From the IMG/VR virus record IMGVR_UViG_3300042514_000542, positions 142,591 to 206,590 of that record: 64,000 nt of DNA; one strand, written 5' to 3'. The position numbers and the translations under genes are program-made. Position 1 is the first letter of the stretch. Every line of letters begins with the position of its first letter. Shown piece after piece: positions 7,278 through 57,427 of the stretch. Under the pieces are notes generated by a model, which was given only the letters and a program-made list of their open reading frames with translations, was not told where the DNA came from and did no database searches.

Positions 7278-7280
7278 TAT

Positions 7281-42283: not shown

Positions 42284-42532
42284 ATGAACAAAATTGAAGC
42301 TAAAAAGTTTGGTGAAGTGTATGTTGCTACCGATGGTGAGAGATCTGCAATTGGTAAGACCGAGGAAGACGCAATTAAAGCTATTGAGGATATGCAAGCA
42401 CTAGCACAGGCCGCTATTGATGAGCAAACATCTAAGAGCAATGCCGCCCCCCTAGAAAATTCTAAGGAGGGACATCCGTTCGATCCATTTGGTGGAACTT
42501 CTTGGTCTGGAAAACGTAATAGTTTTGACTAA
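42284..42532 (+). CDS. Hypothetical protein (early-type promoter)
   Basis: TTGACA at about 42246 and TGaTATTGT upstream. Confidence 0.55.
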   Translation: MNKIEAKKFGEVYVATDGERSAIGKTEEDAIKAIEDMQALAQAAIDEQTSKSNAAPLENSKEGHPFDPFGGTSWSGKRNSFD

Positions 42533-43266
42533 ACGCCCAAAACTTGGGTGATATGTTTGAGCAACGGTGATCTAACAATATCTGTCACATCAAATTCGAC
42601 ACAATGGATGTTATTTTTTCTTGAAAACTCTGTATCGAATAAATCGAAGACATCCGAGAAACCTGAATCTCTAATATCCTTTTGCTTACCATCACCACAA
42701 ATAATATATTTGGTTCCTCTACCAAATCTTGTTAAGATTGTGGTTAATTCAGATCTGGTGGCATTTTGAGCTTCATCAAATATGACAATAGAATTGTTGA
42801 ATGTTAAACCACGGGCAAAGTTAACAGGTATAGCTTTGATATATTCCTGTTCAATCATAGCATTGTAAGATGCTTTATCAGTGGTTTCCAAACATTTTTC
42901 ATTTAGAACCATTGTATATGCTGCAAACTTTTCGTTTTCATCACCCTTTAGATATCCCATAGAACGGGAAGCACTCTCAATGACAGTTCTGATATAAATG
43001 ATCTTATCAGCCTTACGTTCCTTTAACATTTCCAAGGCAGAAAACACGGCACAATATGATTTTGCGGAACCTGCTGGTCCATCTAGAAGAACCATATTCG
43101 TCTTATCATTTTTCACCAAATCTATAAAAGATTTTTGACGATCTGTTAGGGGAAATTGCTTTTTAATAGTTATATTAGAACAATCAAAGTTCTGTTTATA
43201 GTTTTTATTGAATTCATCGGTTATATCCACTTCCTTCCTCTTGCGAGGTGCGCTTTTCTTTTGCAT
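42529..43266 (-). CDS. phoH: PhoH-like ATPase
   Basis: GPAGSAKS, FARGLTF, FDEAQN, LTRFG, GDGKQKD, DIVRS. Confidence 0.93.
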   Translation of the reverse strand: MQKKSAPRKRKEVDITDEFNKNYKQNFDCSNITIKKQFPLTDRQKSFIDLVKNDKTNMVLLDGPAGSAKSYCAVFSALEMLKERKADKIIYIRTVIESASRSMGYLKGDENEKFAAYTMVLNEKCLETTDKASYNAMIEQEYIKAIPVNFARGLTFNNSIVIFDEAQNATRSELTTILTRFGRGTKYIICGDGKQKDIRDSGFSDVFDLFDTEFSRKNNIHCVEFDVTDIVRSPLLKHITQVLGV

Positions 43267-43294: not shown

Positions 43295-43322
43295 TTGACA
43301 AATTAAAAATAAATGTTAAATT
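43295..43322 (+). promoter_or_regulatory. Sigma70-type promoter heading the kinase/GT operon
   Basis: TTGACA-N16-TAAATT with extended TG, 6 nt before ATG 43329. Confidence 0.55.
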
Positions 43323-43328
43323 ATTAAC

Positions 43329-44057
43329 ATGAGGATAGCAATATCAGGCACGGCAAATTCCGGTAAAACTACATTAATCGATGCATTTAAAAATCGATGG
43401 CCGATGTATACAACACCATCGAAGACATATAGAGATGTAATTAAGGAGAATAATTTAGAACATTCATCCAATACAAATGACGATTCACAATTGTTAATTC
43501 TAAATTGGATGATGGAGGAGCAGAAAAAGTATAATAAAGATTCGTATGTCATCTATGATAGATGTCCATGGGATAATTTAGCATATACATTACAGGGAAA
43601 TGCATTAGATAAAATTTCAGATACAGTTACAGCCGCAACTATTTCCTTTGTTAAGGAATCCATGAAGGATCTTGATATTATTTTCTGGCTGAAGTATAAT
43701 CCAGCTATTAAAGTCGTAGAAGATGGGCTTAGAGATGCTAATGAAGCATATATCAAACAAACAGATCAGGTATTCCAAGGATTATTTGATCAGTATATGG
43801 ATAATCTTGAAGAGGACGTATTCTACCCGAAAGATGACTGCCCTGCAATCGTTTGTATCGATGAACACTTTTCTACAGTTGATGATAGATTAATGTTTAT
43901 TGGTGAATTTTTAGACCGTAAAGGTGATTTGATTGATGGGGAGAGTATGCTATCCGAAGAAAACCTGTCGATCTTAGAAGGAATTTTAGGTGATCAAGGT
44001 CGTGAAAAGGAAAACGAAGATAGAATTAATAAAATCATTAAAGAATTTAAGAAATGA
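43329..44057 (+). CDS. P-loop nucleotide kinase-like protein (AAA_28/NadR type)
   Basis: IAISGTANSGKTT, YDRCPWDNLAYT. Confidence 0.8.
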   Translation: MRIAISGTANSGKTTLIDAFKNRWPMYTTPSKTYRDVIKENNLEHSSNTNDDSQLLILNWMMEEQKKYNKDSYVIYDRCPWDNLAYTLQGNALDKISDTVTAATISFVKESMKDLDIIFWLKYNPAIKVVEDGLRDANEAYIKQTDQVFQGLFDQYMDNLEEDVFYPKDDCPAIVCIDEHFSTVDDRLMFIGEFLDRKGDLIDGESMLSEENLSILEGILGDQGREKENEDRINKIIKEFKK

Positions 44058-44881
44058 TTAACAAAAAAGAAACCATTGGTGTTGGTATTATAACCAAAGA
44101 CCGTCAACACCTTTTAAAAACTCTCATAAAAAGTCTCAAAGAGTGCGATTGGGATGAAATTGTCATTATAAACGATGGAAATAAAATTGAAGTAGATGGG
44201 TGGAATCATTGGTGTTATCATTATATTCAGAGAAATGATACAAATTTGGGGGTTGGTATATCAAAAAATAAAGCATTGAAATATCTTCTAGATATGGGAT
44301 GTGATCATATCTTTTTAATTGAAGATGACATCTTTATTAAAGATGGATCAGTTTTTGAAAAATATATTGAGACATCTAAAAAGACTGGTATTCAACATTT
44401 AAATTTCTCTCAACATGGGAGAATGAACAAAAAATGGCCAAATACAACACCAAATCCAAGAGTAGTCATAGATTATGGTGATGTTAAATTACCACTATAC
44501 CCTCATTGTGTTGGTGCATTCTCATATTATTCTAGAAAATGTTTGGAGATTGCTGGACTTATGGACGAGCGATATTTCAATGCTTGTGAACACGTTGATC
44601 ACACTTTAGAAATTATCAAAGCTGGGATACATCCACCATTTTGGTATTTTGCCGATATTGAAAATTCTTGGGAATATTTGGGTGATGAGGAATGGTCTAT
44701 TGAAAAATCAACCATATCATCTAATCCAAATCATAAACAAATGATGAAAGATGCCGATGTAATTTTTAGAGAGAAACATGGTTGCGTTCCGGGTGAGATT
44801 AAACTACTTGGAATTGATGAGGTTGGTAAAACTTTAAAACGTATTAAAAATGGGTATGGATCTGACAATAGTAACATGTAA
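44054..44881 (+). CDS. GT2 glycosyltransferase
   Basis: IGVGIIT..R, IINDG, NLGVGISKN, LIEDD, EH. Confidence 0.88.
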   Translation: MINKKETIGVGIITKDRQHLLKTLIKSLKECDWDEIVIINDGNKIEVDGWNHWCYHYIQRNDTNLGVGISKNKALKYLLDMGCDHIFLIEDDIFIKDGSVFEKYIETSKKTGIQHLNFSQHGRMNKKWPNTTPNPRVVIDYGDVKLPLYPHCVGAFSYYSRKCLEIAGLMDERYFNACEHVDHTLEIIKAGIHPPFWYFADIENSWEYLGDEEWSIEKSTISSNPNHKQMMKDADVIFREKHGCVPGEIKLLGIDEVGKTLKRIKNGYGSDNSNM

Positions 44882-45557
44882 TTATGATACACCTGATTTA
44901 ATTACCAATTTAATGGTGTCTCTCGCTAATACTTGTGATGATATTCCTTATATGTTGGTTATAAGCACAGGAAAATATCCGCTTTTAAACCCAATGAAAC
45001 CGTTATGGCACAACCATAACATTCCACACACATCTCATGGAGATGCTGTTAATGAGGCTTTCAGTTTAGTAAAAACTAGATATATGTTGTTGGTCGATTC
45101 TGATGTTTTATTTCTCAAGGACTTCTATGAGCCATATGAAAAATTCAAAGAGGGTAGATTTGCATTGATGGGTGAAGTTGTTGGTGATCGTGGCGGAAAG
45201 TTAATATATCCTAGAGTTAATCCATGGTTCTGTTTTATTGATTTGGAGCAACTCAAAGAACACAACATTAAATTCTATGACCATTACCGAACCAAAGAAA
45301 TCAAATCTGAAAAGATATATGATATTGGATCTACAATGTTTGAGGATGTTATAAACGCTGGACTAACAATCGGCAATGCCAATATGGAAAATAAATATTT
45401 TAAACACTATGAGGGTATGTCGTGGAGGGTTCAGAAATACAACCCAAACGATGTGGATACTGACATCGATATCGGAGGAACCCACAATAACAAAGCGTTA
45501 TATGATTATGGTCTGAAAGTCAGAGAACAATATGAAAGGGATGTGGTTAAATTATGA
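44850..45557 (+). CDS. GT2-like glycosyltransferase
   Basis: LTIVTCNY, HGDAVN, LLVDSDV, YDIGS, HYEGMSW. Confidence 0.8.
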   Translation: MGMDLTIVTCNYDTPDLITNLMVSLANTCDDIPYMLVISTGKYPLLNPMKPLWHNHNIPHTSHGDAVNEAFSLVKTRYMLLVDSDVLFLKDFYEPYEKFKEGRFALMGEVVGDRGGKLIYPRVNPWFCFIDLEQLKEHNIKFYDHYRTKEIKSEKIYDIGSTMFEDVINAGLTIGNANMENKYFKHYEGMSWRVQKYNPNDVDTDIDIGGTHNNKALYDYGLKVREQYERDVVKL

Positions 45558-46303
45558 AGAATACAACATTTATTATTCACTTTAGACGAGATTGCGAGGA
45601 TAGAATTTTCAATTTAAAAACTATTTTAAAATATTTATATTCCAATAATCCTCTTGAAATAATTGTCATCAACGATGATAATGTTGTAGACCCAATCATG
45701 AAATGGGTAAAGACCGAGTATCCAACAATAAAATTGTTGTTTTGTGAAAATGAAGATGAATTTAAAAAATCTTATTGTTTTAATATGTCAGCATTACAAT
45801 CAACTGGCGATGTGTTATGTTTTTATGATGTTGATGTTTTAGTATCTCAAGCACAATTAGAAGAATCTCAAAATTTAATTTTGAGTGGACAAGCGGATCA
45901 CGTATACCCATTTAATGGAATTTTTATAGATGTTAAAAAGAAATTTTTTCCTATGTTTATTGACACATTTAATTTTGTCACCCTAAACAATGAGGTAACA
46001 GATACAACTTTAGGATTTTACAATGGAAATATAAATATTATATCTGATAAATCACCAGGAGGATGTAATTTAATATCAAAAAAAGCATTTCAAAAAATTG
46101 GGGGATATGATGAAAATTTCATTGGGTGGGGGTTTGAAGATACCGATTTCAGGGAAAGATCCAAGAAGAAAAATAATGTTCGGTATTTAGAGGGGGATAA
46201 GTATTTATATCATTTAGAACACATAACCCATTGTGATCAAGATAGATCGCAACAACCATATTATGGTAACAATTACAAACAATTTATACTAAATCAAAAA
46301 TGA
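45554..46303 (+). CDS. GT2/GT7-C galactosyltransferase-like protein
   Basis: FYDVD, GGYDENFIGWGFEDTDF, HLEH. Confidence 0.88.
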   Translation: MKNTTFIIHFRRDCEDRIFNLKTILKYLYSNNPLEIIVINDDNVVDPIMKWVKTEYPTIKLLFCENEDEFKKSYCFNMSALQSTGDVLCFYDVDVLVSQAQLEESQNLILSGQADHVYPFNGIFIDVKKKFFPMFIDTFNFVTLNNEVTDTTLGFYNGNINIISDKSPGGCNLISKKAFQKIGGYDENFIGWGFEDTDFRERSKKKNNVRYLEGDKYLYHLEHITHCDQDRSQQPYYGNNYKQFILNQK

Positions 46304-47571
46304 ACACTAAAACATATGTACAAATAGGTGCGAATGTAGGAAACGATGATTTTTATGCGAAAGTTAAAAACTTAACTGAACCATCGATAATACATTTGAT
46401 AGAACCGAACATTACCTTACATTCAGAACTACTTAAATGTTATGAAGAGTTAAGTAAATTGCATAATATTAGTGTTCATGGTTATGGAATTTCAAATAAA
46501 TCGGAACATGTATGTTTAAATCTATATGATAACTCTGGATTATCATCGATTATAAATAGGAAATCATATAGTCATAAAACAACAGCTATCGATATTGTAT
46601 GTAAGTCATTCGATGTTTTTTGCGAGGATAATCAAATATCACATATAGATTATTTATGTATAGATACGGAAGGATTGGATTATGAGATTTTAAATAGTAT
46701 TGACATAAACAGAATCAATATAGATGTTATTGAATTTGAAGAATGGCCGTATGAAAACGATGACGATAATGACAATTATAAGACTGGTGTGACATTTTTA
46801 CAATGTGAAGTTTTACCTAAATATAAAAATTATATCCTCGATAAACTTATTATCGGAGATATGCCAAGTTTTAGGTTAACAAAAAAGAAACTTTCTATTG
46901 CATTTACAACATTTAATAGTAGTCAATTCATTGTAGATGCATTATCTAATATTATATATAATGATATAGTTGATGAAATTATTATATCAGATGATAATTC
47001 GGATGATATAACAACTCTTAAAGAAATAATAAATAATTTCAACTGTCCAAAAATAAAATTATTCACACATGAATATCATTTAAATGCTAGTGTAAATAAA
47101 TATAAAGCTGTAATGTATTGTAAAAACGAATATGTTGCGTTAATAGATAGTGATAATGTTATTGATAATAGATACATTGATTTGATAGATTTTAAATATG
47201 ATGGTATACAAATGCCATCATATGCTAGTCCGAATTTCGATTATAGTAGTTTAGTTGGTGAGTATGACTTAGAGAGTATTAAATGGTTGATGAATAGTCC
47301 AAAACGAGATTTAACTTTACAATGTCTGAATACAGGGAATTATATTTTTCCAAAGTTTAGATATTTAGAAATAGCTAATAATGCATTAGAATTTAAATCA
47401 TATGGGGTTGATGTTTTTTATATATCTTGTTTATGGTTGCATTCTAATTATAATATAAAAATACTCAAGGGGTTAGAATATTTTCATAGATTAAGACCGG
47501 ATAGTTTGTGGATGAAAACCTCGAACGATAGTAATATAGTGATGGGGGAACTGATCAATAAATATTTATGA
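46300..47571 (+). CDS. FkbM methyltransferase-GT2 fusion
   Basis: N-terminal QIGANVG, IEPN, IDTEGLD; C-terminal LSIAFTTFN, ISDDNS, LIDSDN. Confidence 0.85.
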   Translation: MNTKTYVQIGANVGNDDFYAKVKNLTEPSIIHLIEPNITLHSELLKCYEELSKLHNISVHGYGISNKSEHVCLNLYDNSGLSSIINRKSYSHKTTAIDIVCKSFDVFCEDNQISHIDYLCIDTEGLDYEILNSIDINRINIDVIEFEEWPYENDDDNDNYKTGVTFLQCEVLPKYKNYILDKLIIGDMPSFRLTKKKLSIAFTTFNSSQFIVDALSNIIYNDIVDEIIISDDNSDDITTLKEIINNFNCPKIKLFTHEYHLNASVNKYKAVMYCKNEYVALIDSDNVIDNRYIDLIDFKYDGIQMPSYASPNFDYSSLVGEYDLESIKWLMNSPKRDLTLQCLNTGNYIFPKFRYLEIANNALEFKSYGVDVFYISCLWLHSNYNIKILKGLEYFHRLRPDSLWMKTSNDSNIVMGELINKYL

Positions 47572-47622
47572 ATAAACAATTAACCATCGGTACAATATTG
47601 GGTTTTAGAAAGAAAATATAAT

Positions 47623-48237
47623 ATGTTAATAGACTTCAATATATTAAAAGATAAGTATGGTATCACCACACATGGAGTGATACATGTTGGTATGCATAAA
47701 GCAGAGGAATATCCAATTTATAAAAACTGTGGGGTGGAAGAAATTATTTTTGTAGAGGCTAACCGAGATTTGGCGCATGGGTGGGTGAATGATGATCCTC
47801 ATTGTCATGTAGTCCATGCTGCGGTTTCAGATAAAGAAGAAATTATTAAATTCCACATCACCAATAATGGTGAAAGTTCCTCAATTTTAGAGTTGGGTGA
47901 TCATGCTAAGATATATCCACATATTGTAAATGTTGATACTGTTGAAATGAAGACCACCACATTAGATACGATTATTGAAAGGGTTGGTGTTTATAAGTTC
48001 GTATGGAATGTTTTAAATTTGGACATTCAGGGAGCAGAACTCAAGGCTATGAAGGGGCTAACCAATTGGGATAGTATTGAAGCCGTCTTCACTGAAGTAA
48101 ACTATAGAGAGATGTATAAGGGGTGTGGATTGGAACCGGAAGTTACCAAGTTTTTGGAGGATAAGGGATTTGAAAAGGTTGAAGAAGATGATACTGGATG
48201 TGGGTGGGGGGACGCACTATATATTAAAAAGAAATGA
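47623..48237 (+). CDS. FkbM family methyltransferase
   Basis: IHVGMHKAEE, VEAN, SSSIL, LDIQGAEL, WGDALY. Confidence 0.9.
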   Translation: MLIDFNILKDKYGITTHGVIHVGMHKAEEYPIYKNCGVEEIIFVEANRDLAHGWVNDDPHCHVVHAAVSDKEEIIKFHITNNGESSSILELGDHAKIYPHIVNVDTVEMKTTTLDTIIERVGVYKFVWNVLNLDIQGAELKAMKGLTNWDSIEAVFTEVNYREMYKGCGLEPEVTKFLEDKGFEKVEEDDTGCGWGDALYIKKK

Positions 48238-48992
48238 AAAATAAATGTTACGTTGATGTTAGTGGCGGTATTGGAAATCAGCTATTTAAGGTGGCTAATG
48301 GATATGCTTATAGCCAAAGGTATAATTTAGAGTTGGTTATAGATCCAACTAATTGGACAGCATCTCAAGGAACTAGTCCAATTCTATACCAATCCAATAT
48401 ATTTAAAAATTTTAACATTATCCCTAGAGGTGAAACTACAGAAATTCATGAAATATCCTTTAATTTTATGGAACTACCGAAATATGATTGGTCATATGGT
48501 GATATATCTCTACATGGTGGTTTTCAATCTCTGAAATATTTTGAAGATTATAAGGATGAGTTTATCAGTCTACTATGTTTACCGAAGGTAGATACATCAT
48601 TTATATCATCGGATGCTAATATAGCGTTTCATATTAGATTTGGTGATTATCAACATTATCCCAAAATATTTGGAGATATTACTAACTATTTCCATAAACA
48701 ATTTGAGAAGTTTTCTCCAGATTTTCAGATTAATGTATTTTCGGATTCTCCAGAATTAGTATTGAATAAATTCCGAAACTATAAATTTAATCTAATAAAA
48801 ACATCATCCGAGTTGAATGACTTGACTTTACTTTCTCTACATGATAGGATAGTTTGTAGTAACTCGACATTCTCTTGGTGGGCATCATTACTGGGTGCGA
48901 AAAAAGAATTGATTATCGTACCCGATAAATGGTTATTAGATCGAGATTGTAAAGATATATATTACGAAGGAATGATAAAAAATGAGTTTTAA
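48234..48992 (+). CDS. GT11 alpha-1,2-fucosyltransferase-like protein
   Basis: GGIGNQLF, FQSLKYF, HIRFGDY, FSD, NSTFSWW. Confidence 0.9.
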   Translation: MKNKCYVDVSGGIGNQLFKVANGYAYSQRYNLELVIDPTNWTASQGTSPILYQSNIFKNFNIIPRGETTEIHEISFNFMELPKYDWSYGDISLHGGFQSLKYFEDYKDEFISLLCLPKVDTSFISSDANIAFHIRFGDYQHYPKIFGDITNYFHKQFEKFSPDFQINVFSDSPELVLNKFRNYKFNLIKTSSELNDLTLLSLHDRIVCSNSTFSWWASLLGAKKELIIVPDKWLLDRDCKDIYYEGMIKNEF

Positions 48993-49329
48993 AGCATCGA
49001 ACTACCTAATTTTCGACCAGTCTAAAAACGAACTGGATAATGAATTACTTGAGGAATTTAATCCTTGGATGACAACCAAAACATTCTCATTTTATAATGA
49101 TGGGGAATTCATTCATTATATCAATGATTTTTTGAATGGTAATACCAACATCTTCAAAACTAAAGAAGAACAATTTAAATATTATGAGAATGTCATTCCC
49201 AGACAGAAATTTAAAAGAATAACTTATATTAAGAAATCTAAAACCGAAAAAGTCGAAGAGTATCCAATTCCAGAATTTTACTCTAGGCGCGAGATCGACT
49301 TATTTGAAAATATAAATATCATCACATGA
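48982..49329 (+). CDS. gp62: Clamp-loader small subunit (gp62-like)
   Basis: FNPWMTTKTFSF...IN..LN...EQFKYY..VIPRQKFKRITYIKK...YSRRE resembles the gp62 pattern. Confidence 0.6.
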   Translation: MSFKASNYLIFDQSKNELDNELLEEFNPWMTTKTFSFYNDGEFIHYINDFLNGNTNIFKTKEEQFKYYENVIPRQKFKRITYIKKSKTEKVEEYPIPEFYSRREIDLFENINIIT

Positions 49330-50003
49330 TAACTCTAATTACACCAACTGGCGGAAGACCTAAATCATTTGCATTGCTAGAAAAATATATGAGTAGGCAG
49401 TCAATGCCTTTCGATCAATGGATCGTAGTTGACGATTTTGAAACACCAACTCCATGTAATTTAGGACAAATGGTTATTCGTAGGCAACCCTTTTGGAAAC
49501 CTGGTGAAATGACCTTACCTTTAAATATATTAACCGCACTACCATGGGTTAGAGGGGAATATATATTGATCGTTGAGGATGATGACTGGTATAATCCTGA
49601 TTATATTAGAATAATGGTTGACCGATTGCAAAATTATGATCTAGTTGGTGGGGGTATTGCCCACTATTATAATGTGTCAACATTTCGTCATATAATACAC
49701 GGAAATACTCTAAATGCTAGTTTATGTGAAACCGGATTTAGACGAAGTGTTATGGATTCTATCGAGTCATGTATTCAATCTCACATCAATGAAATGTATG
49801 TTGATGGATATATATGGGATTTACCATTGAATAAATTAGTGTTCAATGACTCGGTTAATTGTATTGGTATAAAAGGTATGCCGGGTAGAGGGGGGCTTGG
49901 TCATGGACATCTAATTGATTTTGGATATCTAGACTCAACACCCTTCGATACATTACAAAAATGGATTGGGGATGATGTCAAATATTATAAAGATTTGCGA
50001 TGA
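49326..50003 (+). CDS. GT2-like glycosyltransferase
   Basis: ITLITPTGGRP, WIVVDD, IVEDDDWY. Confidence 0.85.
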   Translation: MITLITPTGGRPKSFALLEKYMSRQSMPFDQWIVVDDFETPTPCNLGQMVIRRQPFWKPGEMTLPLNILTALPWVRGEYILIVEDDDWYNPDYIRIMVDRLQNYDLVGGGIAHYYNVSTFRHIIHGNTLNASLCETGFRRSVMDSIESCIQSHINEMYVDGYIWDLPLNKLVFNDSVNCIGIKGMPGRGGLGHGHLIDFGYLDSTPFDTLQKWIGDDVKYYKDLR

Positions 50004-50018
50004 TAGTTTACGTAACTA

Positions 50019-50774
50019 TTATCTTTTTTGTAAAAAATCTAGTAGTAATTGATTGTAATCAATATTCCATTTCGGAGTTAGTGTAATATCTCCGGTGGGT
50101 ATCTTTCCTTTTATTCTTAGTTCTTCTATATGTCTTGAGTGCCTGACTATAATACTCTCTCTATCTGCTGTGTCTGCACCTTGACCAGACATATGATAAC
50201 TTCTATCAGCCCACAAATACATCCAAGAAACCTCCTCATCTGGAGGCTCTGCGAGAACCACCCTACATTGATATTCATTCTTTAGTTTTACGACAAATGA
50301 CATATCATATCCAGCATTTTCTAATTCATGTTTACCTGATTTTTCCCATATATTTTTAGTATAAACAATACCAGAATTACCCAAACTATGGATCGCATCA
50401 ACCTTTTTATAATTTACGGCTGCACCCTTTTGCCAATGTAATAAATCATATCCAGGAAAATATTTATTGATATTTTCCAAATGGTTTGGTAGTGCGATAT
50501 CATCATCGTCCCAAACCGCTATCGTGTCATATTTACAGTTATCGACCGCAAAATTCTCCTTTTCACCAATAGTTTCGAATGTTCTATTAAGATTAATTAT
50601 TTTAACATTTGGATGGTCGAAATATAATTTTTGCTCTGGGTAATCATTCACGATTACCATCTCTCGCTCACCATCATATTCCTGATTTAAAAAGCTGAAT
50701 AAAGATTCCTCAAGTAAGTCCACTCTACCGTATGTAATACACTTACATGAAATAGGTATTTTATCATTCATCAT
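50019..50774 (-). CDS. GT2 glycosyltransferase (late promoter)
   Basis: CITYGR, FLNQEY, IVND, WDDDD; TAAATA 8 nt before MMNDK. Confidence 0.88.
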   Translation of the reverse strand: MMNDKIPISCKCITYGRVDLLEESLFSFLNQEYDGEREMVIVNDYPEQKLYFDHPNVKIINLNRTFETIGEKENFAVDNCKYDTIAVWDDDDIALPNHLENINKYFPGYDLLHWQKGAAVNYKKVDAIHSLGNSGIVYTKNIWEKSGKHELENAGYDMSFVVKLKNEYQCRVVLAEPPDEEVSWMYLWADRSYHMSGQGADTADRESIIVRHSRHIEELRIKGKIPTGDITLTPKWNIDYNQLLLDFLQKR

Positions 50775-50871
50775 ATCGGAGATATTTACTCGTAACAATA
50801 ATTAATCAATCTAAAATCTCTTTATTAAATCTAGTATATTGACATATAAATAAACCAAATTAAATACCACT

Positions 50872-51306
50872 ATGAGCGAACAAGTTCCAGCATCAATTGA
50901 TATCCTTAAACCATTACATTCACATCTAGATCTTTCGGACCGCAGTTTACCAACAGATTTCGGGTTGGAAAATTATAAATTGGCTAAACTTATGGATGAC
51001 GTTATGTTGGTAGAGTTCTGTGACTTACAGAGTGGTGAAGACGGTGTGGAATATGTTATGCGTGGTGGTATTGCCATCCCAACCACACAAGTCCATAACA
51101 TGTGGAGAAAAGGTCGTGTTATCCTCAAGGGTCCGAACGTTCGATATACCGAAGTTGGTGAGATTGTAGTCTTTCCAGCTAACATGGGGATTCAAGTCAC
51201 AAACATTGATGTTGATGGATATGGCAAGATCTCCAAAGGTCTTTTCCTAAACGAGCAAAGAATGTTTGGTATTTGTGTTGATAAAGATGCGGAAGTGCCT
51301 TTTTAG
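50872..51306 (+). CDS. GroES-like co-chaperonin (gp31 analogue)
   Basis: DDVMLVE, GGIAIP, GRVILKGP, VGEIVVF, LNEQRMFG. Confidence 0.75.
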   Translation: MSEQVPASIDILKPLHSHLDLSDRSLPTDFGLENYKLAKLMDDVMLVEFCDLQSGEDGVEYVMRGGIAIPTTQVHNMWRKGRVILKGPNVRYTEVGEIVVFPANMGIQVTNIDVDGYGKISKGLFLNEQRMFGICVDKDAEVPF

Positions 51307-52293: not shown

Positions 52294-53907
52294 ATGACAA
52301 ACCTCATACTCAATTTCCCTGATGGATACTCTCCATCTAATCCACAGGTCGAGATATTAAAATCAATAGAGAGACACATCCAAAATGGTGTGAAATATAT
52401 AGTGGTGAATGCCCCCACCGGATCTGGAAAATCATTTATTCCAAAGACCATAGCAAACAGCGTAAATGGTGCATCGGATTATTTCAAACAAGTTGTTGAC
52501 GATTATAGTATTTTTTCTGACACTGGTGAGGATTTGATAGCGGATGAAGACCCATTTGGTGTATATGCTCTAACTATCACCAAAACCCTTCAAGATCAAT
52601 ATAAGAATACTTTTAATGATACTGGTATACTTAAGGGTCAAAGTAATTATCGGTGCGCTATTGACGATAGTATGACTGTCGATATTGCACCATGCATCTA
52701 CGTTAAAGGGTTGAAAAATGATTGTTGGAAGGCTAATAAATGCCCATATTACAACTCTAGAAATGAAATGCTTAAGAGTAATTTCTCATCACTTAACTAT
52801 AGTATGTTTTTCAGTTTACCAGATCATTTAAAGAAGCGAAAGATAATCGTTTGCGATGAAGGATCTGAACTAGAGGAACAACTTGTCGGTCAATTTTCTT
52901 GCGAAATTGACATTCCATTCCTAGTCAAGACTGGAACCAATACCTCTTCATTCCCATCCCAAGAAACACCAACCAAAGTCCTAACATGGTTGAATGAGCT
53001 ACTATTATCTCTGAATTCAAATATAGATGATTATAAACAATATCTAAAGGATCATAAGGGTTCTACGGATTTCTTTAAAAAATCCAGTGAATATACAAGG
53101 TTGCTAAACCTACAAGGAAGTATTCAAATTTTAATATTAACATTCTACGACAGTGAATATATTATAGAACGCGAGGAGAAGAACATAAAATTCACACCTT
53201 TGAAAGTTGATAAACTTTCTCAATATATTTTTAATCACGCTGATCATGTGATCATCATGTCTGCCACAATTATCGACCATAAAAGTTTCTGTAAAGGTCT
53301 GGGTATTCCAAAATATGAATATATTGAGGTTGATACAGAGTTCGATCATAGTAAGGGACCAATCCATATCATGGTTAAACAGAAATTGAATTTTAATAAC
53401 CTTAAAGAAATGTTACCGACATTAGCTAAACAGGTTAGAGGTATTCTTGAAGAACATAAAGACGATAAAGGTATTATTCACACACATACACAATATATTG
53501 CAGATTATATTAGGGATTATGTGAAATCTGATCGTCTTTTATGTAGGGAGACTGGAGTAAAAAATGAGGAAATATTAGACCTACATGAGAGATCTAAAGA
53601 GCCTACAGTATTGGTTTCTCCTAGCATGACTTATGGTGTTGACCTCAAGGGTGATCTAGCTAAGTTCCAAATACTTTTAAAAGCACCTTGGCTACCGACA
53701 AAAGAAAAACGTGTTGAGAAGATGATGAAGCTTGACAAACAATGGTATTCGAATAAGATGCTATGCACACTAGTTCAAGCTTGTGGTAGGGGTCTTAGAT
53801 CGTCCGATGACGAGTGTATCACTTACATTTTAGATGGATCGATATTTGATGTCGTGGTGAGGAACAAAAGTAAATTACCCAAATATTTTATAGACCGCTT
53901 TGAATAA
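52294..53907 (+). CDS. DinG/XPD-family helicase
   Basis: APTGSGKS, LKGQSNYRC, four-Cys cluster, VCDEGS, MSAT, GVD, QACGRGLRSSDD. Confidence 0.88.
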   Translation: MTNLILNFPDGYSPSNPQVEILKSIERHIQNGVKYIVVNAPTGSGKSFIPKTIANSVNGASDYFKQVVDDYSIFSDTGEDLIADEDPFGVYALTITKTLQDQYKNTFNDTGILKGQSNYRCAIDDSMTVDIAPCIYVKGLKNDCWKANKCPYYNSRNEMLKSNFSSLNYSMFFSLPDHLKKRKIIVCDEGSELEEQLVGQFSCEIDIPFLVKTGTNTSSFPSQETPTKVLTWLNELLLSLNSNIDDYKQYLKDHKGSTDFFKKSSEYTRLLNLQGSIQILILTFYDSEYIIEREEKNIKFTPLKVDKLSQYIFNHADHVIIMSATIIDHKSFCKGLGIPKYEYIEVDTEFDHSKGPIHIMVKQKLNFNNLKEMLPTLAKQVRGILEEHKDDKGIIHTHTQYIADYIRDYVKSDRLLCRETGVKNEEILDLHERSKEPTVLVSPSMTYGVDLKGDLAKFQILLKAPWLPTKEKRVEKMMKLDKQWYSNKMLCTLVQACGRGLRSSDDECITYILDGSIFDVVVRNKSKLPKYFIDRFE

Positions 53908-55138
53908 TATGAATTTAAAAAAATATAAACGAATTAGGAAATTAGTTAACGGTTTAATGACTACAACATACGTTCCCAAAAAAGAAAATAGAAATATGAC
54001 AACCTTAAAAAAATATTTAAATCACTTTATGTGGTATGATTTATCTAACGATGATCTTTTAAACATCATTCCATCACCAGTATTCGATATCGAGTATCCT
54101 TCAAATTTTGAAACACATTTTGGTAAAATTCCAACGGTATTTTTAAAAATAGATGATAAAATTCTACCTTTGGAAAACTTCAACAAATTTCAAAAATATC
54201 TATTATCGCAAGGATTTGATTTAATGGAATGCGGGTATGAGACTTTCAAATATATTCATTTTGAAAGAAAAATACTTATTAGTGGTGATGCCACTGATAT
54301 GTCTATCGATCTTGAAGAGGATGAAGAGGATGACTATCCCAGAGGAAATCGATCAATCGAATCCGAAACTATTTATATAAATTTACTCCCAACTCTTGAA
54401 AATAAAGAGTTTATCGAAAAAGTGATGAAAAAAATCCATTCATTTCTTATTGATGTTTCGACTCAAATCGATAAGTTCTACATGATTGCTCAGGGTCAAA
54501 ATGGACTGTTTACACAGAAGACTAAATTTAAATCTATACCTGTGGAAGATGATAGATTCGATTTATTCTATGGTAGAGAATTTCCACATGAAAAAATGCA
54601 AAGGTTTGTATGGGATAAAACCGATAACCTTATGCTACTTCACGGAGATCCCGGCACAGGTAAGTCTAATTATATTAAACATCTTATAACTAGTTCTAAG
54701 AAAAAAGTTATATATATCCCACCATCTATGCTTAGTGTCATCTCCGATCCGGGATTTGTAACATTTATGATGAGTAACAAGGATAGTATTCTTCTGATTG
54801 AAGATGCCGAAGAAGTATTATCAGTGGATAGAAATTCGGCAACCAATAACCTATTAGGATTAACTGACGGATTTTTAAAAGATGCGTTGGGGCTGAAGGT
54901 TATTGCCACATTCAATTGTGATATCGGTAAAATTGACCCTGCTTTGAAAAGAAAAGGTCGTATGTATTTTGAATACAAGTTTGATAAATTAAGTGTTGAT
55001 GAGTGTAGAACATTGGCTACTCACTTAAAACTAGATAAAGAGATTAGAGATCCTATGACACTTGCGGAATTTTTTAGTGTTGAGGAAAACACAATAGAGG
55101 ATTCGTTTAAAGAACGTTTTATAGGGTTTGCGACATGA
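53900..55138 (+). CDS. AAA+ ATPase
   Basis: LLHGDPGTGKS, LLIEDAE, TFN, IDPALKRKGR, IGF tail. Confidence 0.88.
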   Translation: MNNMNLKKYKRIRKLVNGLMTTTYVPKKENRNMTTLKKYLNHFMWYDLSNDDLLNIIPSPVFDIEYPSNFETHFGKIPTVFLKIDDKILPLENFNKFQKYLLSQGFDLMECGYETFKYIHFERKILISGDATDMSIDLEEDEEDDYPRGNRSIESETIYINLLPTLENKEFIEKVMKKIHSFLIDVSTQIDKFYMIAQGQNGLFTQKTKFKSIPVEDDRFDLFYGREFPHEKMQRFVWDKTDNLMLLHGDPGTGKSNYIKHLITSSKKKVIYIPPSMLSVISDPGFVTFMMSNKDSILLIEDAEEVLSVDRNSATNNLLGLTDGFLKDALGLKVIATFNCDIGKIDPALKRKGRMYFEYKFDKLSVDECRTLATHLKLDKEIRDPMTLAEFFSVEENTIEDSFKERFIGFAT

Positions 55139-55157: not shown

Positions 55158-56252
55158 GTGAAAACATATTCCTATTTCCGAGAAACCCTTAACACCCTCA
55201 CACAATTCACCGCAGCGTTCGATGATTGTGTAGTGTGGAGGTATGATAAAAATTTCGAGAAGAAGGAAAAAATCAATGTTCGATATGTATTTGGTCCAAA
55301 AAATAGGGTATTGTACGACATAGTTAATCAGTCTAAGAATATCACTCTTCCTGTTATTTCAATTGAGCAGACTAACGTTAAAAGAGATTCTAGTCGAATC
55401 CAATTTAAGGATCAGAAGATAACCCGAAGAAATCTTAATGATGATAGTATTTCAAGGGTTCCAAGTCCCATACCAGTCACCATGGATCTTAATGTATCCA
55501 TGGTAGCTAATTATAAAGAGGATATTGATCAAATAGCTGCAAATATTCTACAGTGGTTTAATCCATATATAATTATATCTTGTAAGATTCCAGAAGAATT
55601 TGGAATGGATTTTATAGATGAAATCAGAACCGAGGCTACTTGGGGTGGTTCAGTGGATTACGAAAACCCAACGAATATCGCGGCATCGGACAAATATAAA
55701 ATCGTTGGGAATACCACTTTTAATGTTAAGGGTTGGATATTCCCAGCATTAGAAACACCCCAAGCACCTATTTACGTTGTAAATACAAATTTTGTATCGG
55801 TATCGAGCGGTTCCATACTAAATGGATATGATGATTTCTGGTCATTATCCGCTAATAATACGACGGATTCGATCTTAATCTCCGCATTCCCAGAATTTAC
55901 AAATTATTTTATAAATGGTCGCCCATATGATGAGTTAATTTTAAACGATATCAATGATAAAACATTTACATTTTACGGGAAAAGATTTGATTTTAATAAC
56001 ACTTGGTATCTAAGTTCAAATGTAGTAATACCCGAATTAGTATATACCGAAATAGACACCGCTAAATTTCCTACCATATCTGCTTATAAATTACCTGATA
56101 GTGTTATCACCACTGTAAATGATAATATAGTATCAATTAGTTTAAGTTCGGGGTATTTGAATTTGAGTGGCGGATATGTTTTTATCACAGCCAATGATGC
56201 GGGATGGGGTCTGTCAACTGGAATTTTTATAAACTCTGATAATTTATTTTAA
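55158..56252 (+). CDS. gp15: Tail completion/sheath stabiliser (gp15-like) with a C-terminal extension
   Basis: F...FDD, YVFGPK, ITLP.IS, DQI...IL.WFNP, FNVKGWIFP. Confidence 0.8.
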   Translation: MKTYSYFRETLNTLTQFTAAFDDCVVWRYDKNFEKKEKINVRYVFGPKNRVLYDIVNQSKNITLPVISIEQTNVKRDSSRIQFKDQKITRRNLNDDSISRVPSPIPVTMDLNVSMVANYKEDIDQIAANILQWFNPYIIISCKIPEEFGMDFIDEIRTEATWGGSVDYENPTNIAASDKYKIVGNTTFNVKGWIFPALETPQAPIYVVNTNFVSVSSGSILNGYDDFWSLSANNTTDSILISAFPEFTNYFINGRPYDELILNDINDKTFTFYGKRFDFNNTWYLSSNVVIPELVYTEIDTAKFPTISAYKLPDSVITTVNDNIVSISLSSGYLNLSGGYVFITANDAGWGLSTGIFINSDNLF

Positions 56253-56312
56253 ATGGGATTATAATTTTCTACAATGGTCAGAAAATTATATATAATTAAG
56301 TTAAATAATTAT

Positions 56313-57416
56313 ATGGCAATAGATTTAGGCGATAATCCAGTGGGAATCCCCCCCACAGCAGGTGAGGCGACCCAAATTAGAACGGTTTTAGGGTTGGGTA
56401 ATGTTAACAATACATCTGATCTAGATAAACCGATCTCGACAGCCACACTATCGGCACTTAATTTAAAAGAGACTCCCGCTGGAGCAGCCGCGCAAATCGC
56501 AGCATCCGCCCTTACTGACGCACAAGTGGGCAACCAAGTCGGTAACGAGCTTGTGGCTACTTTTTCAGCGTTGGCCGCTGTATCCACACTAAATCCCGGC
56601 TGTCTGGTGTTGGCCACTTCTCGTCCGAATGCTGCTAACGTCATAATCAGGACATCAACTGGCTACGCTCGACCTATTCTCGCTGCCACTGGAGCATTGT
56701 CCACTCAGGTTGGGACAGGGGTTGTTGGCGCACAGTTAACAATCCCCATTGCTGCTGGTGCTGCCATGCGTGCAATGTCGGTAATCAGTGTTGCGAGCGG
56801 TGGCTCTGTCCGTAGTGGTAACATCACTGACATTAATATTTCTGATGTGGGCTTACACAGTATGCCCACATCGCACTTAACAGCTTTGACTGCGCTGACT
56901 GTTATTAACAGTAGGTTGCCCAGCTTTGACGGGTCTGGGCTTACTTCGCTCACAATCCTAGCCTTAAACAGCAACAATCAACTCCGCTCCTTTACCAAGG
57001 GAACAGGATTAGAATCACTGTTGAGCCTAACGTTAAATTCTAATAGACTGACAACGTTTTCGGGAGTGGGACTTAGCGTATTAAGAAATCTCTTTTTAAA
57101 TAATAACCAACTCACAACTTTTGACGCTACTGGATTAGGTGAGCTTAGGACATTAAACGTTTCAAACAACACAACCCTGAATAGCTTTGTTTTGTCCAGT
57201 GTCCCAACCCTAGTTTCTCTTCGTAATGAGGATATTTCGACTTTTGCAGTGGTTGCAAATGGTTGCTCTTTAAGTGCGCAAGCAATCAATGACTTCTTCA
57301 CTGCACTCCCGCCAGCAACAAACGGAGCAGCAACTCTAGTCTTCAACGGAAACCCAGGAAGTGCAACTGCCAATGCATCCATTGCCACCTCCAAAGGTTA
57401 CACTGTATCCCTCTAA
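56313..57416 (+). CDS. Fibre-anchored leucine-rich-repeat protein
   Basis: LGLGNVNNTSDLDKPISTA fibre repeat; at least four LxxLxLxxN repeats; elevated GC; TAAATA 5 nt before MAIDLG. Confidence 0.7.
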   Translation: MAIDLGDNPVGIPPTAGEATQIRTVLGLGNVNNTSDLDKPISTATLSALNLKETPAGAAAQIAASALTDAQVGNQVGNELVATFSALAAVSTLNPGCLVLATSRPNAANVIIRTSTGYARPILAATGALSTQVGTGVVGAQLTIPIAAGAAMRAMSVISVASGGSVRSGNITDINISDVGLHSMPTSHLTALTALTVINSRLPSFDGSGLTSLTILALNSNNQLRSFTKGTGLESLLSLTLNSNRLTTFSGVGLSVLRNLFLNNNQLTTFDATGLGELRTLNVSNNTTLNSFVLSSVPTLVSLRNEDISTFAVVANGCSLSAQAINDFFTALPPATNGAATLVFNGNPGSATANASIATSKGYTVSL

Positions 57417-57427
57417 AATAAATCATC

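What the first reader, a model, noticed from the sequence alone, without database searches (positions are those of the whole stretch)
43295..50003. Kinase-GT-methyltransferase operon under an early-type promoter, with a gp62-like gene embedded
Seen: nine tightly coupled ORFs follow a TTGACA/extended -10 promoter, begin with a P-loop kinase and contain a clamp-loader-like subunit between two GTs. Other GTs (50019, probably 9320 and 30617) have late-type promoters. Inference: two temporal classes of GT. The early operon, co-expressed with a replication factor and a nucleotide kinase, could serve DNA hypermodification or host-surface remodelling (superinfection exclusion) rather than virion decoration.
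Basis: partly seen in the sequence, partly recalled or inferred. Interest (0 to 1): 0.65.

Follow-up and report, generated by a model that had tools for sequence, protein, structure and literature searches.

The report
Sugar-chain gene island in lake phage
A large T4-like phage from lakes carries a patchwork island of sugar-chain-building genes between two DNA-metabolism genes; such islands are known in big aquatic phages, and what the sugar chain is attached to is still unknown.

Summary
Nine co-oriented ORFs (43329-50003; seven of eight junctions overlap) follow TTGACA-N16-TGnTAAATT. The promoter match alone is at chance level, but its position is not: the -10 ends 6 nt before the ATG, it is kept in four relatives, and its class (15 genes vs 0.6 expected) also drives DNA polymerase, gp44 and a helicase.

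O1 is a dTMP-/deoxynucleoside-/NR-kinase-fold enzyme. O2-O5, O7 and O9 are glycosyltransferases, and O5 and O6 carry FkbM methyltransferase domains. O8 is a short gp62-type clamp-loader subunit (profile-profile E 1.6e-6; best fold match T4 gp62).

In 12 related loci the kinase and O8 are fixed backbone genes. A mosaic glycan island always lies between them. O2, O3, O4 and O7 recur; O5 and O9 are unique to this genome.

DNA hypermodification is not supported: no ThyA-type hydroxymethylase, TET/JBP or T4 glucosyltransferase, and ThyX is present. All enzymes are soluble, and the genome has no flippase-, polymerase- or priming-transferase-like membrane protein.

Most likely the island builds a methylated oligosaccharide in the cytoplasm. 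I favour a phage protein as acceptor (about 0.4) over a host envelope precursor (about 0.3). Two promoter classes among the glycosyltransferases are real as motifs, but 30617 is not late-type. This is a new member of a known kind.

The parts
43295..43322 (+). Sigma-70-like promoter: -35 TTGACA (43295-43300), 16-nt spacer holding TG (43314-43315), -10 TAAATT (43317-43322). It ends 6 nt before the ATG, which implies a leaderless or near-leaderless mRNA.
   Evidence: The class is enriched at start codons (15 genes vs 0.62 expected). It is conserved before the kinase gene in L011, L012, L013 and L018.
43329..44057 (+). O1: P-loop nucleoside/nucleotide-kinase-fold protein (dTMP kinase / deoxynucleoside kinase / NadR-type NR kinase). 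A backbone gene of the lineage and the left flank of the island.
   Evidence: Pfam AAA_28 2.5e-11 and dNK 8.6e-6. phrog_2107 'thymidylate kinase' 2e-19. AF2 pLDDT 83.9; Foldseek best matches are yeast dTMP kinase 3tmk (E 7e-6) and M. mycoides dAK, with NadR at rank 46. 391 homologs. First gene after PhoH in all 9 loci that reach that far.
44054..44881 (+). O2: GT-A (GT2-like) glycosyltransferase, the conserved first gene of the island.
   Evidence: phrog_2456 1e-24. Pfam GT2 21.3 bits, under the cut-off of 23.3. Present in 10 of 13 loci (window included), one of the two most widely shared island families.
44850..45557 (+). O3: probable GT-A glycosyltransferase (weak match), conserved in the proximal part of the island.
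   Evidence: Pfam GT2 19.9 bits, under the cut-off, over residues 63-136, with a DSD motif at residue 83. Present in 9 loci.
45554..46303 (+). O4: GT-A glycosyltransferase with a galactosyltransferase-type C-terminal part.
   Evidence: Pfam Glyco_tranf_2_2 2.3e-15 and Glyco_transf_7C 1.1e-11. Present in 8 loci. GC 0.281.
46300..47571 (+). O5: fusion of an FkbM-type methyltransferase (N-terminal) and a GT2 glycosyltransferase (C-terminal). Unique to this genome among 13 loci, with the lowest GC of the region.
   Evidence: Pfam Methyltransf_21 1.4e-12 (residues 8-156) and GT2 4.2e-10 (residues 199-291). TIGR01444 above its cut-off. The family occurs in 1 locus only. GC 0.265. No close relative in bacterial genomes.
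47623..48237 (+). O6: FkbM-type methyltransferase.
   Evidence: Pfam Methyltransf_21 8.1e-12. TIGR01444 46.2 bits against a cut-off of 37.7. Present in 6 loci.
48234..48992 (+). O7: GT11 (alpha-1,2-fucosyltransferase-like) glycosyltransferase.
   Evidence: Pfam Glyco_transf_11 1.9e-9, 37.7 bits against a cut-off of 23.9. phrog_2644 4.6e-28. Present in 10 loci.
48982..49329 (+). O8: short gp62-type clamp-loader small subunit (collar domain, residues 1-78, plus an invariant C-terminal IPEFYS+RE motif). A backbone gene and the right flank of the island.
   Evidence: hhalign of the O8 family against 12 short gp62 proteins: probability 90.2%, E 1.6e-6, 73 columns. Structure search of 48,161 chains: rank 1 is T4 gp62 3u5z_A (Z 6.6, rmsd 2.8 over 70 residues), and ranks 2-4 are RFC/Rad24 collar domains. 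No other gp62 candidate in the genome. The gp44 homolog lies about 53 kb away with no gp62 beside it. Present in all 12 loci that cover the site.
49295..49318 (+). Internal promoter-like site inside the 3' end of O8: degenerate -35 TCGACT (49295-49300) and TATAAATA (49311-49318), 7 nt before the O9 ATG. In relatives the same position holds the TTGACA...TAAATA promoter of the next backbone gene.
49326..50003 (+). O9: GT2 glycosyltransferase, an insertion unique to this genome.
   Evidence: Pfam GT2 9.3e-8. The family occurs in 1 locus only.
50019..50774 (-). O10: convergent GT2 glycosyltransferase. The likely start is ATG 50774, with TAAATA at 50788-50783 (8 nt upstream). Members of this family sit at different positions in relatives.
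   Evidence: Pfam GT2 4.6e-8. Sequence. The family occurs in 9 loci, before or after the gp62-like gene.
50839..50866 (+). Promoter of backbone gene c144 (50872-51306): TTGACA-N16-TAAATA, 5 nt before the ATG. It is a second copy of the promoter that in relatives lies inside the gp62-like gene.
42529..43266 (-). PhoH, the divergent left neighbour (backbone gene), with TAAATA (43279-43274) 7 nt before its ATG.
   Evidence: Pfam PhoH 1.4e-49. Sequence. Beside the kinase gene in relatives.

Best explanation
The region is a mosaic glycan-synthesis island at a fixed hot spot of a freshwater T4-like myovirus lineage. It holds GT-A glycosyltransferases O2, O3, O4, O5 and O9, the GT11 fucosyltransferase-like O7, and two FkbM methyltransferase domains in O5 and O6.

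The island lies between two backbone genes of DNA and nucleotide metabolism. On the left is a dTMP-/deoxynucleoside-/NR-kinase-fold P-loop kinase (O1). On the right is a short gp62-type clamp-loader subunit (O8). In this genome two extra glycosyltransferases (O9, O10) were inserted beyond O8.

The island has no promoter of its own. It rides on the kinase gene's conserved sigma-70-like promoter, which belongs to the same class as the promoters of DNA polymerase, gp44 and the helicase. It is therefore probably made before or together with the replication proteins (inferred from motifs, not shown).

The enzymes are all soluble. With host nucleotide-sugars and SAM they would build a methylated oligosaccharide, probably one containing deoxyhexose, at the cytoplasmic side (inferred).

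The least certain step is the acceptor. I favour a phage-encoded, probably virion, protein, for two reasons. The first enzymes of the island (O2, O3) are among its most widely shared while the rest varies. And no lipid-priming transferase, flippase, polymerase or exporter is present in this phage genome, nor in the islands of the relatives whose genes carry precomputed Pfam hits. The kinase and the gp62-like protein take no part in the sugar chemistry.
For: Family assignments.

Promoter: geometry, class enrichment and conservation in relatives are. The class also includes DNA polymerase, gp44, the helicase, a UvsY-like gene and an SDR epimerase.

O8 as gp62: hhalign E 1.6e-6; best fold match T4 gp62 followed by RFC collar domains; no other gp62 candidate in the genome.

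O1 fold.

Synteny in 12 related loci is PhoH | kinase -> island -> gp62-like -> c144 -> c189 -> c126 -> helicase -> gp15 -> portal. Island content runs from largely shared to almost wholly replaced. O5 and O9 are unique, and GC is low in O4, O5 and O7.

No hydrophobic segment in any island protein, and no ORF in the genome with more than 4 such segments.

The stretch is a real contiguous sequence. One contig of an independent lake-water run spans 43301-49300 with a single difference.
Against: No expression, glycan or acceptor data exist, and the phage is uncultured.

The operon's -10 (TAAATT) differs by one base from the late-class hexamer TAAATA at the same distance from the ATG, so late or dual expression cannot be excluded.

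Peripheral O-antigen glycosyltransferases of bacteria are also soluble and could use the host's carrier lipid, flippase and ligase. The absence of membrane components is therefore only weak evidence for a protein acceptor.

The kinase overlaps O2 by 4 nt and precedes the island in every relative, which could also mean a functional link.

O2 and O3 fall below Pfam's GT2 cut-off.

The gp62 assignment rests on remote homology. phrog_225 finds nothing and the complex prediction gave no verdict.
Confidence: 0.55

Rival explanations
1. Host-surface remodelling. The early-made soluble glycosyltransferases extend or rebuild a host envelope glycan (O-antigen, core or capsule precursor on the carrier lipid), using the host's own flippase and ligase. 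The infected cell changes its surface and excludes competing phages.
For: The promoter is sigma-70-like and of the replication class. GT2, GT11 and FkbM enzymes are typical of O-antigen clusters. The same reading has been proposed for glycosyltransferase-rich islands of pelagimyophages (PMC7029224) and of large cyanomyophages (PMC12801897). Island variation could track the glycan diversity of host strains.
Against: No priming transferase, flippase, polymerase, exporter or Gtr-type membrane protein is in the genome, and none shows among the precomputed Pfam hits of the relatives' island genes. A foreign repeat unit would have to pass the host's specific Wzx, Wzy and ligase. The first island enzymes are conserved across relatives, which is not expected if the acceptor is a variable host glycan. 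No experimental case is known to me for a lytic T4-like phage (own knowledge).
Confidence: 0.3
2. DNA hypermodification. The kinase and glycosyltransferases decorate phage DNA bases with sugars, as in T-even phages, to escape restriction.
For: Early-type promoter, co-transcription with a nucleotide-kinase-fold enzyme and a replication factor. Virus glycosyltransferases that put varied glycans on DNA are known (Pyle et al. 2024, as cited in PMC12619734).
Against: The genome (CheckV 100%) has no ThyA/dCMP- or dUMP-hydroxymethylase family, no TET/JBP and no T4 beta- or alpha-glucosyltransferase family. It has ThyX for ordinary dTMP. Six or seven glycosyltransferases plus two O-methyltransferases, and in relatives fucosyltransferase families GT10 and GT11, a sulfotransferase and amino-sugar enzymes, go far beyond any DNA glycan known to me.
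Confidence: 0.04
3. The kinase is part of the glycan pathway. It would supply dTDP/dTTP for dTDP-sugars, or phosphorylate the sugar chain as a terminating step together with the methyltransferases, in the manner of WbdD.
For: The kinase is the first gene before the island in all 9 loci, with a 4-nt overlap with O2. The fold is dTMP-kinase-like. O2 has a weak rhamnosyltransferase-family match.
Against: The kinase family is far larger (391 hits) and much better conserved than the island. Its fold is that of nucleoside and nucleotide kinases, not of the protein-kinase-like glycan kinases. The genome has ThyX and a NadV-type NAPRTase. These offer simpler partners: dTMP to dTDP, or NAD salvage.
Confidence: 0.12
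4. O8 is not a clamp-loader subunit but a small helical accessory protein of the glycan island.
For: There is no Pfam or PHROG hit, and phrog_225 finds nothing. The gene is not next to gp44 or regA. Z 6.6 is modest for a helical domain (note). The complex prediction gave no verdict.
Against: The profile-profile match to gp62 has E 1.6e-6 over 73 columns. The sequence and structure alignments agree in register. O8 stays in place when the whole cassette is exchanged (L010, L017). It heads the conserved block that leads to the helicase. The genome would otherwise have gp44 without a partner.
Confidence: 0.1

Closest known systems
Glycosyltransferase / 'LPS gene' clusters of large aquatic T4-like myophages (P-SSM2, S-SCSM1, S-SCSM2R; pelagimyophage host-recognition cluster)
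   Same: These are lytic T4-like aquatic phages of about 200 kb that carry many GT2, GT11 and GT10 genes, NDP-sugar epimerases and methyltransferases in variable regions between conserved modules. The acceptor has not been tested in any of them (PMC12801897; PMC7029224).
   Different: This is a different lineage: the portal is only about 28% identical to cyanophage portals, and the habitat is lake water. Here the island has a defined hot spot between a kinase and a gp62-like gene inside a replication-class transcription unit. It does not sit in the tail-fibre region.
Virion glycosylation systems: mycobacteriophage capsid and tail-tube O-glycosylation (Freeman et al. 2023, as cited in PMC12619734); chlorovirus and mimivirus capsid or fibril glycans (own knowledge)
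   Same: Virus-encoded soluble glycosyltransferases, with methyltransferases and in relatives rare-sugar enzymes, act in the cytoplasm without lipid carrier or export genes. The gene sets are specific to clade or strain. O5's methyltransferase-glycosyltransferase fusion recalls the multi-domain GT-GT-MT enzyme of PBCV-1 (own knowledge).
   Different: No glycoprotein has been shown here. The island is under a replication-class promoter rather than in the late structural operon, where the mycobacteriophage genes lie. The host and the acceptor are unknown.
T4 gp62 / cyanophage-type short gp62 (clamp-loader small subunit)
   Same: Profile homology (E 1.6e-6) and a collar-domain fold. The length (115 aa) is near the 130-145 aa of the short type.
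   Different: O8 lacks the C-terminal GYSxEKAxQAL...GG segment of the short type. It is about 53 kb from gp44 and is not followed by a recognisable regA. Its C-terminal codons in relatives hold the -35 of the next gene's promoter.
T-even DNA glucosylation (dCMP hydroxymethylase gp42, dNMP kinase gp1, alpha- and beta-glucosyltransferase)
   Same: An early-type promoter, and a nucleotide-kinase-fold enzyme together with glycosyltransferases in a T4-like phage.
   Different: No hydroxymethylase and no alpha- or beta-glucosyltransferase family. ThyX is present. The number and kinds of enzymes do not fit a DNA glycan.

Membership tests
gp62 clamp-loader small subunit | Sequence or profile homology to gp62 proteins | tested here: met
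   hhalign of the O8 family (21 sequences) against 12 short gp62: probability 90.2%, E 1.6e-6, O8 20-101 aligned to gp62 24-97. Against single sequences (T4, one cyanophage) the E-values are only 0.15 and 0.13. The phrog_225 HMM finds nothing in the genome.
gp62 clamp-loader small subunit | Helical collar domain like gp62 / RFC domain III | tested here: met
   AF2 model pLDDT 74.9. Of 48,161 chains, rank 1 is 3u5z_A (T4 gp62) with Z 6.6 and rmsd 2.8 over 70 residues. Ranks 2-4 are Rad24-RFC and P. furiosus RFC collar domains. Foldseek's first hit is also gp62, but E = 2. The Z-score is modest for a helical domain.
gp62 clamp-loader small subunit | Gene next to gp44 (and usually regA) | tested here: not met
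   The gp44 homolog at G000:137830-138732(-) ends its operon with no gp62 beside it. The gene after O8 in relatives (c144) has no RegA match.
gp62 clamp-loader small subunit | Forms a complex with four gp44 subunits | tested here: inconclusive
   Complex prediction with 4 gp44 collar domains plus O8 scored 0.00, 0.83 and 0.00. The verdict was 'no answer'.
Sigma-70-type (early/middle) promoter | -35 and -10 hexamers at 16-18 nt spacing, placed before a gene, conserved in relatives | tested here: met
   TTGACA-N16-TAAATT with TG at -15/-14. 15 genes with this geometry against 0.62 expected. Conserved in 4 relatives.
Sigma-70-type (early/middle) promoter | Transcript start and early timing | not testable with these tools
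   No RNA run holds the sequence. The runs laid were contigs.
GT2 / GT-A glycosyltransferases | Pfam match above the curated cut-off | tested here: met
   O4, O5, O9, O10 and 9320 are above the cut-off. O2 (21.3 bits) and O3 (19.9 bits) are below the cut-off of 23.3, but O2 matches phage glycosyltransferase PHROGs at 1e-24.
GT11 fucosyltransferase family | Pfam PF01531 above the cut-off | tested here: met
   O7: 37.7 bits against 23.9, covering the C-terminal 113 residues only. Donor sugar not tested.
FkbM methyltransferases | PF05050 / TIGR01444 above the cut-off | tested here: met
   O5 N-terminal part 48.5 bits and O6 46.0 bits against 22.7. TIGR01444 58.6 and 46.2 bits against 37.7.
dTMP kinase / deoxynucleoside kinase / NadR-type NR kinase | Family HMM above the cut-off, and the fold | tested here: inconclusive
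   AAA_28 44.5 bits (cut-off 27) is met. dNK 26.1 (cut-off 27) and TIGR00041 20 (cut-off 83) are not met. The fold matches TMPK and dNK at E 7e-6 and NadR at 2e-4. The substrate stays open.
Phage DNA glyco-hypermodification systems | A hydroxymethyl-pyrimidine source (ThyA-type hydroxymethylase or TET/JBP) and a DNA glycosyltransferase | tested here: not met
   PF00303, PF12851, PF09198 and PF11440 are all absent from the complete genome. ThyX is present.
Wzx/Wzy- or ABC-dependent surface polysaccharide clusters | Priming phosphoglycosyl transferase, flippase or ABC exporter, polymerase (polytopic membrane proteins) | tested here: not met
   Hydropathy scan: no island protein has a hydrophobic 19-mer, and no ORF of the genome has more than 4 such segments. 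No such Pfam family shows among the precomputed hits of the relatives' island genes. This is a crude test, and host proteins could serve.
Virion glycosylation systems | Glycan covalently bound to a capsid or tail protein | not testable with these tools
   Needs virions or heterologous expression with mass spectrometry.

The most novel reading that the evidence does not exclude
A T4-like phage lineage of lakes decorates its own virion proteins with strain-specific, methylated, fucose-type glycans. They would be made by an island that is exchanged like an O-antigen locus at a fixed hot spot. This would give phage particles 'serotypes', and it would be the first glycosylated T4-like virion.
Probability: 0.35. 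Interest if true: 0.7.

Novelty: new member of a known kind. Interest (0 to 1): 0.4.

Why it matters
Glycosyltransferase-rich islands are common in the largest aquatic T4-like phages, and nobody has shown what they glycosylate. This lineage offers a clean case. The hot spot has fixed flanks, the first enzymes are among the most widely shared, the distal set is exchangeable, and many natural variants exist. That makes the acceptor question testable by expressing the conserved first enzymes with candidate phage proteins.

The work also gives a remote but supported gp62 assignment for a phage group in which the clamp-loader partner was unannotated. It further gives a three-class, leaderless promoter grammar that can be used to predict timing in uncultured relatives.

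Tried and rejected
- blastn of the region and tblastn of O8 against 50,697 phage records: no match.
- phmmer and profile search of O8 against PDB sequences: nothing.
- phrog_225 (T4 gp62 family) on the whole genome: nothing even at E <= 10.
- Complex prediction of O8 with four gp44 collar domains: 'no answer' (0.00, 0.83, 0.00). This is not evidence either way.
- Paralogy of O8 with the other 115-aa ORF before a glycosyltransferase (8962-9309): none.
- O3 against O9: no significant similarity.
- Search for close relatives of the unique O5 fusion in 185,579 bacterial and archaeal genomes: none, so no donor or host clue.
- RNA evidence: no RNA run holds the stretch. The four runs laid were DNA contigs and show presence only.
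- The Freeman et al. 2023 paper (PMC10527164) is not held. It is cited only through PMC12619734 and from my own knowledge.
- 'Moraphages' (PMC12619734) were considered as the lineage and set aside. They are described as lying outside the T4 group, whereas this genome has the T4 portal, gp15, gp44 and gp46.
- The host was not determined.

Full report
WHAT THE WINDOW IS. The window is bases 142591-206590 of a 206,590-bp virus record that CheckV rates as complete. It carries a T4-type portal (58492-60318), gp15 (55158-56252), PhoH, a family-B DNA polymerase (27550-30120), SbcC/gp46 and UvsW-type helicases. A gp44 clamp-loader gene lies just upstream of the window and is 33% identical to T4 gp44. 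The portal is only about 28% identical to those of cyanophages, so this is a distant T4-like myovirus. The stretch, or near-identical pieces of it, occurs in lake-water metagenomes of several studies. One independent contig spans 43301-49300 with a single difference. Genome GC is 0.35.

THE OBSERVATION. The nine + strand ORFs are as described. Seven of the eight junctions overlap, one is a 51-nt gap, and there is no terminator-like site on the + strand. The family scans give:
- O1: P-loop kinase (AAA_28, dNK-like).
- O2, O3: GT2-like. Both fall under Pfam's cut-off, but O2 matches phage glycosyltransferase PHROGs at 1e-24.
- O4: GT-A with a galactosyltransferase-type C-terminus.
- O5: fusion of an FkbM methyltransferase and a GT2.
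- O6: FkbM methyltransferase.
- O7: GT11.
- O8: no family hit.
- O9: GT2.
- The convergent neighbour (50019-50774): GT2.

All GT2-family matches of the whole genome lie in this window. 30617-31825 is a GT1/GT4-like enzyme.

PROMOTERS. In this AT-rich DNA a plain sigma-70 pattern scan finds no more sites than shuffled sequence does (69 vs 63.7). A match alone therefore means nothing, so I called genes over the whole genome and looked at what precedes start codons. Three classes stand far above chance.

- Class A is TTAATTAAAACCGAAnTAyAAT followed by 6 nt and ATG. About 70 copies lie before small genes at 21-110 kb (40 by a strict pattern against 0.32 expected).
- The late-like class is TAAATA 5 nt (31 genes) or 6 nt (14 genes) before the start codon, without a -35. 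It has 49 genes against 0.87 expected. It precedes the portal, gp15 and a gp13-like gene.
- The sigma-70-like class is TTGAC[AT]-N15-18-TAnnn[TA]-N4-12-start. It has 15 genes against 0.62 expected. It precedes DNA polymerase, gp44, the helicase at 52294 (a perfect TTGACA-N17-TATAAT), a UvsY-like gene, an NDP-sugar epimerase, the glycosyltransferase at 30617, and the kinase at 43329.

The finding's promoter (TTGACA 43295-43300, TG 43314-15, TAAATT 43317-22, then 6 nt to the ATG) belongs to the third class. It is kept before the kinase gene of four diverged relatives while the spacer changes. Shine-Dalgarno-like words are not enriched before start codons (7% against 11% background). All three classes put the -10 a few bases before the ATG, which implies leaderless or near-leaderless first genes. 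'Early' and 'late' are labels by analogy with T4 and by the kinds of genes served. No RNA data exist.

- 9320 sits behind 8962, which has a late-like site.
- The 50019 gene has TAAATA 8 nt before a likelier ATG at 50774.
- 30617 and 21568 are sigma-70-like.
- O9 has its own TATAAATA 7 nt before its ATG, inside the end of O8.

THE gp62-LIKE GENE. O8 (115 aa) has no Pfam, PHROG or PDB sequence match. The T4 gp62 PHROG finds nothing anywhere in the genome. Three independent lines still point to gp62.

1. The gp44 homolog ends its operon with no partner beside it.
2. An AF2 model (pLDDT 74.9) was compared with 48,161 PDB chains without a prefilter. T4 gp62 came first (3u5z_A: Z 6.6, rmsd 2.8 over 70 residues, model 1-78 on chain 38-108). 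RFC and Rad24 collar domains followed at ranks 2-4. Foldseek also ranks gp62 first, though not significantly.
3. A profile of 21 O8 homologs aligns with a profile of 12 short gp62 proteins from cyanophages, a pelagiphage, Ackermannviridae and PhiW-14. The probability is 90.2% and E is 1.6e-6 over 73 columns. The register agrees with the structural alignment and with the weak T4 alignment.

O8 lacks the C-terminal segment of the short gp62 type and has instead an invariant IPEFYS+RE motif. A complex prediction with gp44 collar domains gave no verdict. I put O8 as the phage's gp62 equivalent at about 0.8-0.9.

THE KINASE. The model (pLDDT 83.9) matches yeast dTMP kinase, Mycoplasma deoxyadenosine kinase and other deoxynucleoside kinases at E around 1e-5, and NadR at 2e-4. 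The family has at least 391 members, and the 120 best are 57-88% identical to O1. The genome has ThyX and a NadV-type NAPRTase, but no NMNAT-family match. The substrate may therefore be dTMP, a deoxynucleoside or nicotinamide riboside. It is not a sugar-kinase fold.

SYNTENY. I examined twelve related loci, with kinase identity of 53-74% where the gene is covered. All show the same frame: PhoH | kinase -> glycan genes -> gp62-like -> c144 -> c189 -> c126 -> helicase -> (AAA) -> gp15 -> portal. The kinase is present in all 9 loci that reach that far, and the gp62-like gene in all 12 that cover its site.

Between these flanks the content is mosaic. O2 occurs in 10 loci, O7 in 10, O3 in 9, O4 in 8 and O6 in 6. 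An O10-type GT2 occurs in 9 loci, at changing positions. Many genes are singletons. In L010/L006 almost the whole cassette is replaced by amino-sugar and deoxy-sugar enzymes (DegT, SDR dehydratases, a TPP-dependent E1 pair). Other relatives add GT10, GT25, a sulfotransferase, a cytidylyltransferase-like gene and GIY-YIG homing endonucleases. O5 and O9 are unique to this genome, and O4, O5 and O7 have low GC.

In relatives the promoter of c144 (TTGACA...TAAATA) lies inside the last codons of the gp62-like gene. In this genome O9 sits behind that site, and c144 has a second copy of the promoter at 50839-50866. So O9 and O10 are insertions to the right of the old island border. The kinase and the gp62-like gene are therefore backbone flanks, not island cargo.

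WHAT THE GLYCAN IS FOR. Base glycosylation of DNA needs a hydroxymethyl-pyrimidine source. The complete genome has no ThyA-family enzyme, no TET/JBP and no T4-type DNA glucosyltransferase, and it makes dTMP with ThyX. The enzyme set (six or seven glycosyltransferases and two O-methyltransferases; in relatives fucosyltransferase families, a sulfotransferase and rare-sugar enzymes) is that of a surface-type heteroglycan. I rate the DNA reading at about 0.04.

No island protein has a hydrophobic segment, and no ORF of the genome looks like a flippase, polymerase or priming transferase. No such family shows among the precomputed Pfam hits of the relatives' island genes either. Two NDP-sugar SDR enzymes are encoded elsewhere, one of them under a sigma-70-like promoter next to gp44.

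This leaves assembly at the cytoplasmic side on one of two acceptors: a protein, or a host lipid-linked precursor handled further by host proteins. I favour a phage protein, probably a virion protein. The proximal enzymes (O2, O3) are among the most widely shared island genes while the rest varies, which fits a conserved, phage-encoded acceptor. Such a system also needs nothing that is missing. The argument is indirect. Peripheral O-antigen transferases are soluble too, and the host-surface reading is the one proposed in the literature for similar islands (PMC7029224; PMC12801897). My split is about 0.4 phage protein, 0.3 host envelope, 0.04 DNA, and the rest other or unknown.

COMPARISON AND NOVELTY. 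Islands rich in GT2, GT11 and GT10 genes, epimerases and methyltransferases are described in P-SSM2, S-SCSM1, S-SCSM2R and pelagimyophages. Their acceptor is untested. This is a new member of that kind in a different, freshwater lineage. What is added here:
- the exact hot spot and its flanks;
- the identification of the flank O8 as gp62;
- evidence that the island uses a replication-class promoter;
- the promoter grammar of the genome.

LIMITS. Gene calls outside the region come from a simple longest-ORF script, so some starts are wrong. Two such cases were corrected (50774, 22266). The membrane-protein test is a hydropathy scan. The host is unknown.

Noticed in passing
genome G000:C1 about 21,000-110,000 (outside the window); the one copy in the window is at 10400-10379 (- strand), before ORF 10147-10377: About 70 copies of a 22-nt box, TTAATTAAAACCGAAnTAyAAT, each 6 nt before an ATG of a small gene (40 by a strict pattern against 0.32 expected). 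A few carry TTGACA just upstream. It looks like the phage's own early or middle promoter class, with a conserved spacer or an activator box.
   Followed up: partly
whole genome; examples 43329, 52294, 58492: Shine-Dalgarno-like words are not enriched before start codons (7% against 11% background). In all three promoter classes the -10 element ends 4-12 nt before the start codon, which implies leaderless first genes. Downstream genes mostly overlap by 4 nt.
   Followed up: partly
window 49295-49318 and 50839-50866; L009, L010, L019, L020 at the 3' end of the gp62-like gene: In relatives the -35 TTGACA of the next gene's promoter is encoded by the conserved R-E-I-D-M codons at the end of the gp62-like protein. 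In this genome that site now precedes the inserted glycosyltransferase O9, and the displaced gene c144 has a second copy of the promoter.
   Followed up: yes
The TTG 'start' of the mechanical ORF call is really the -35 of TTGACT-N16-TACTGT-N5-ATG (ATG at 22266).
   Followed up: yes
G000:C1:139463-140371 (-), window -3127..-2219; G000:C1:111092-111832 (-): Two NAD-dependent NDP-sugar epimerase/dehydratase genes lie outside the island. The first is next to gp44 and under a sigma-70-like promoter.
   Followed up: partly
G000:C1:66951-67538 (-) and 75938-76744 (-): ThyX thymidylate synthase and a NadV-type NAPRTase (509-aa frame) are present. No NMNAT-family match was found. Together with the AAA_28 kinase O1 this may hint at partial NAD salvage.
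   Followed up: no
L035:12634-13437, L036:12209-12886: GIY-YIG homing-endonuclease genes sit inside the glycan islands of relatives. They are a possible driver of cassette exchange at this hot spot.
   Followed up: no
window 56001-58000 (ORF 56274-57416): GC rises to 0.454 against about 0.35 elsewhere. The ORF between gp15 and the portal has leucine-rich-repeat matches just under Pfam's cut-offs and is missing at this place in several relatives.
   Followed up: no
window 6255-8141: Two ORFs with weak Mtd_N (major tropism determinant N-terminal) matches lie just upstream of the late-promoter pair 8962/9320, so glycosyltransferase 9320 is next to fibre-like genes.
   Followed up: no
window 53900-55138: A 412-aa AAA protein between the helicase and gp15 is conserved in relatives (52-66% identity). 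It has only a weak match to the clamp-loader PHROG (E 0.0014). Function unknown.
   Followed up: no
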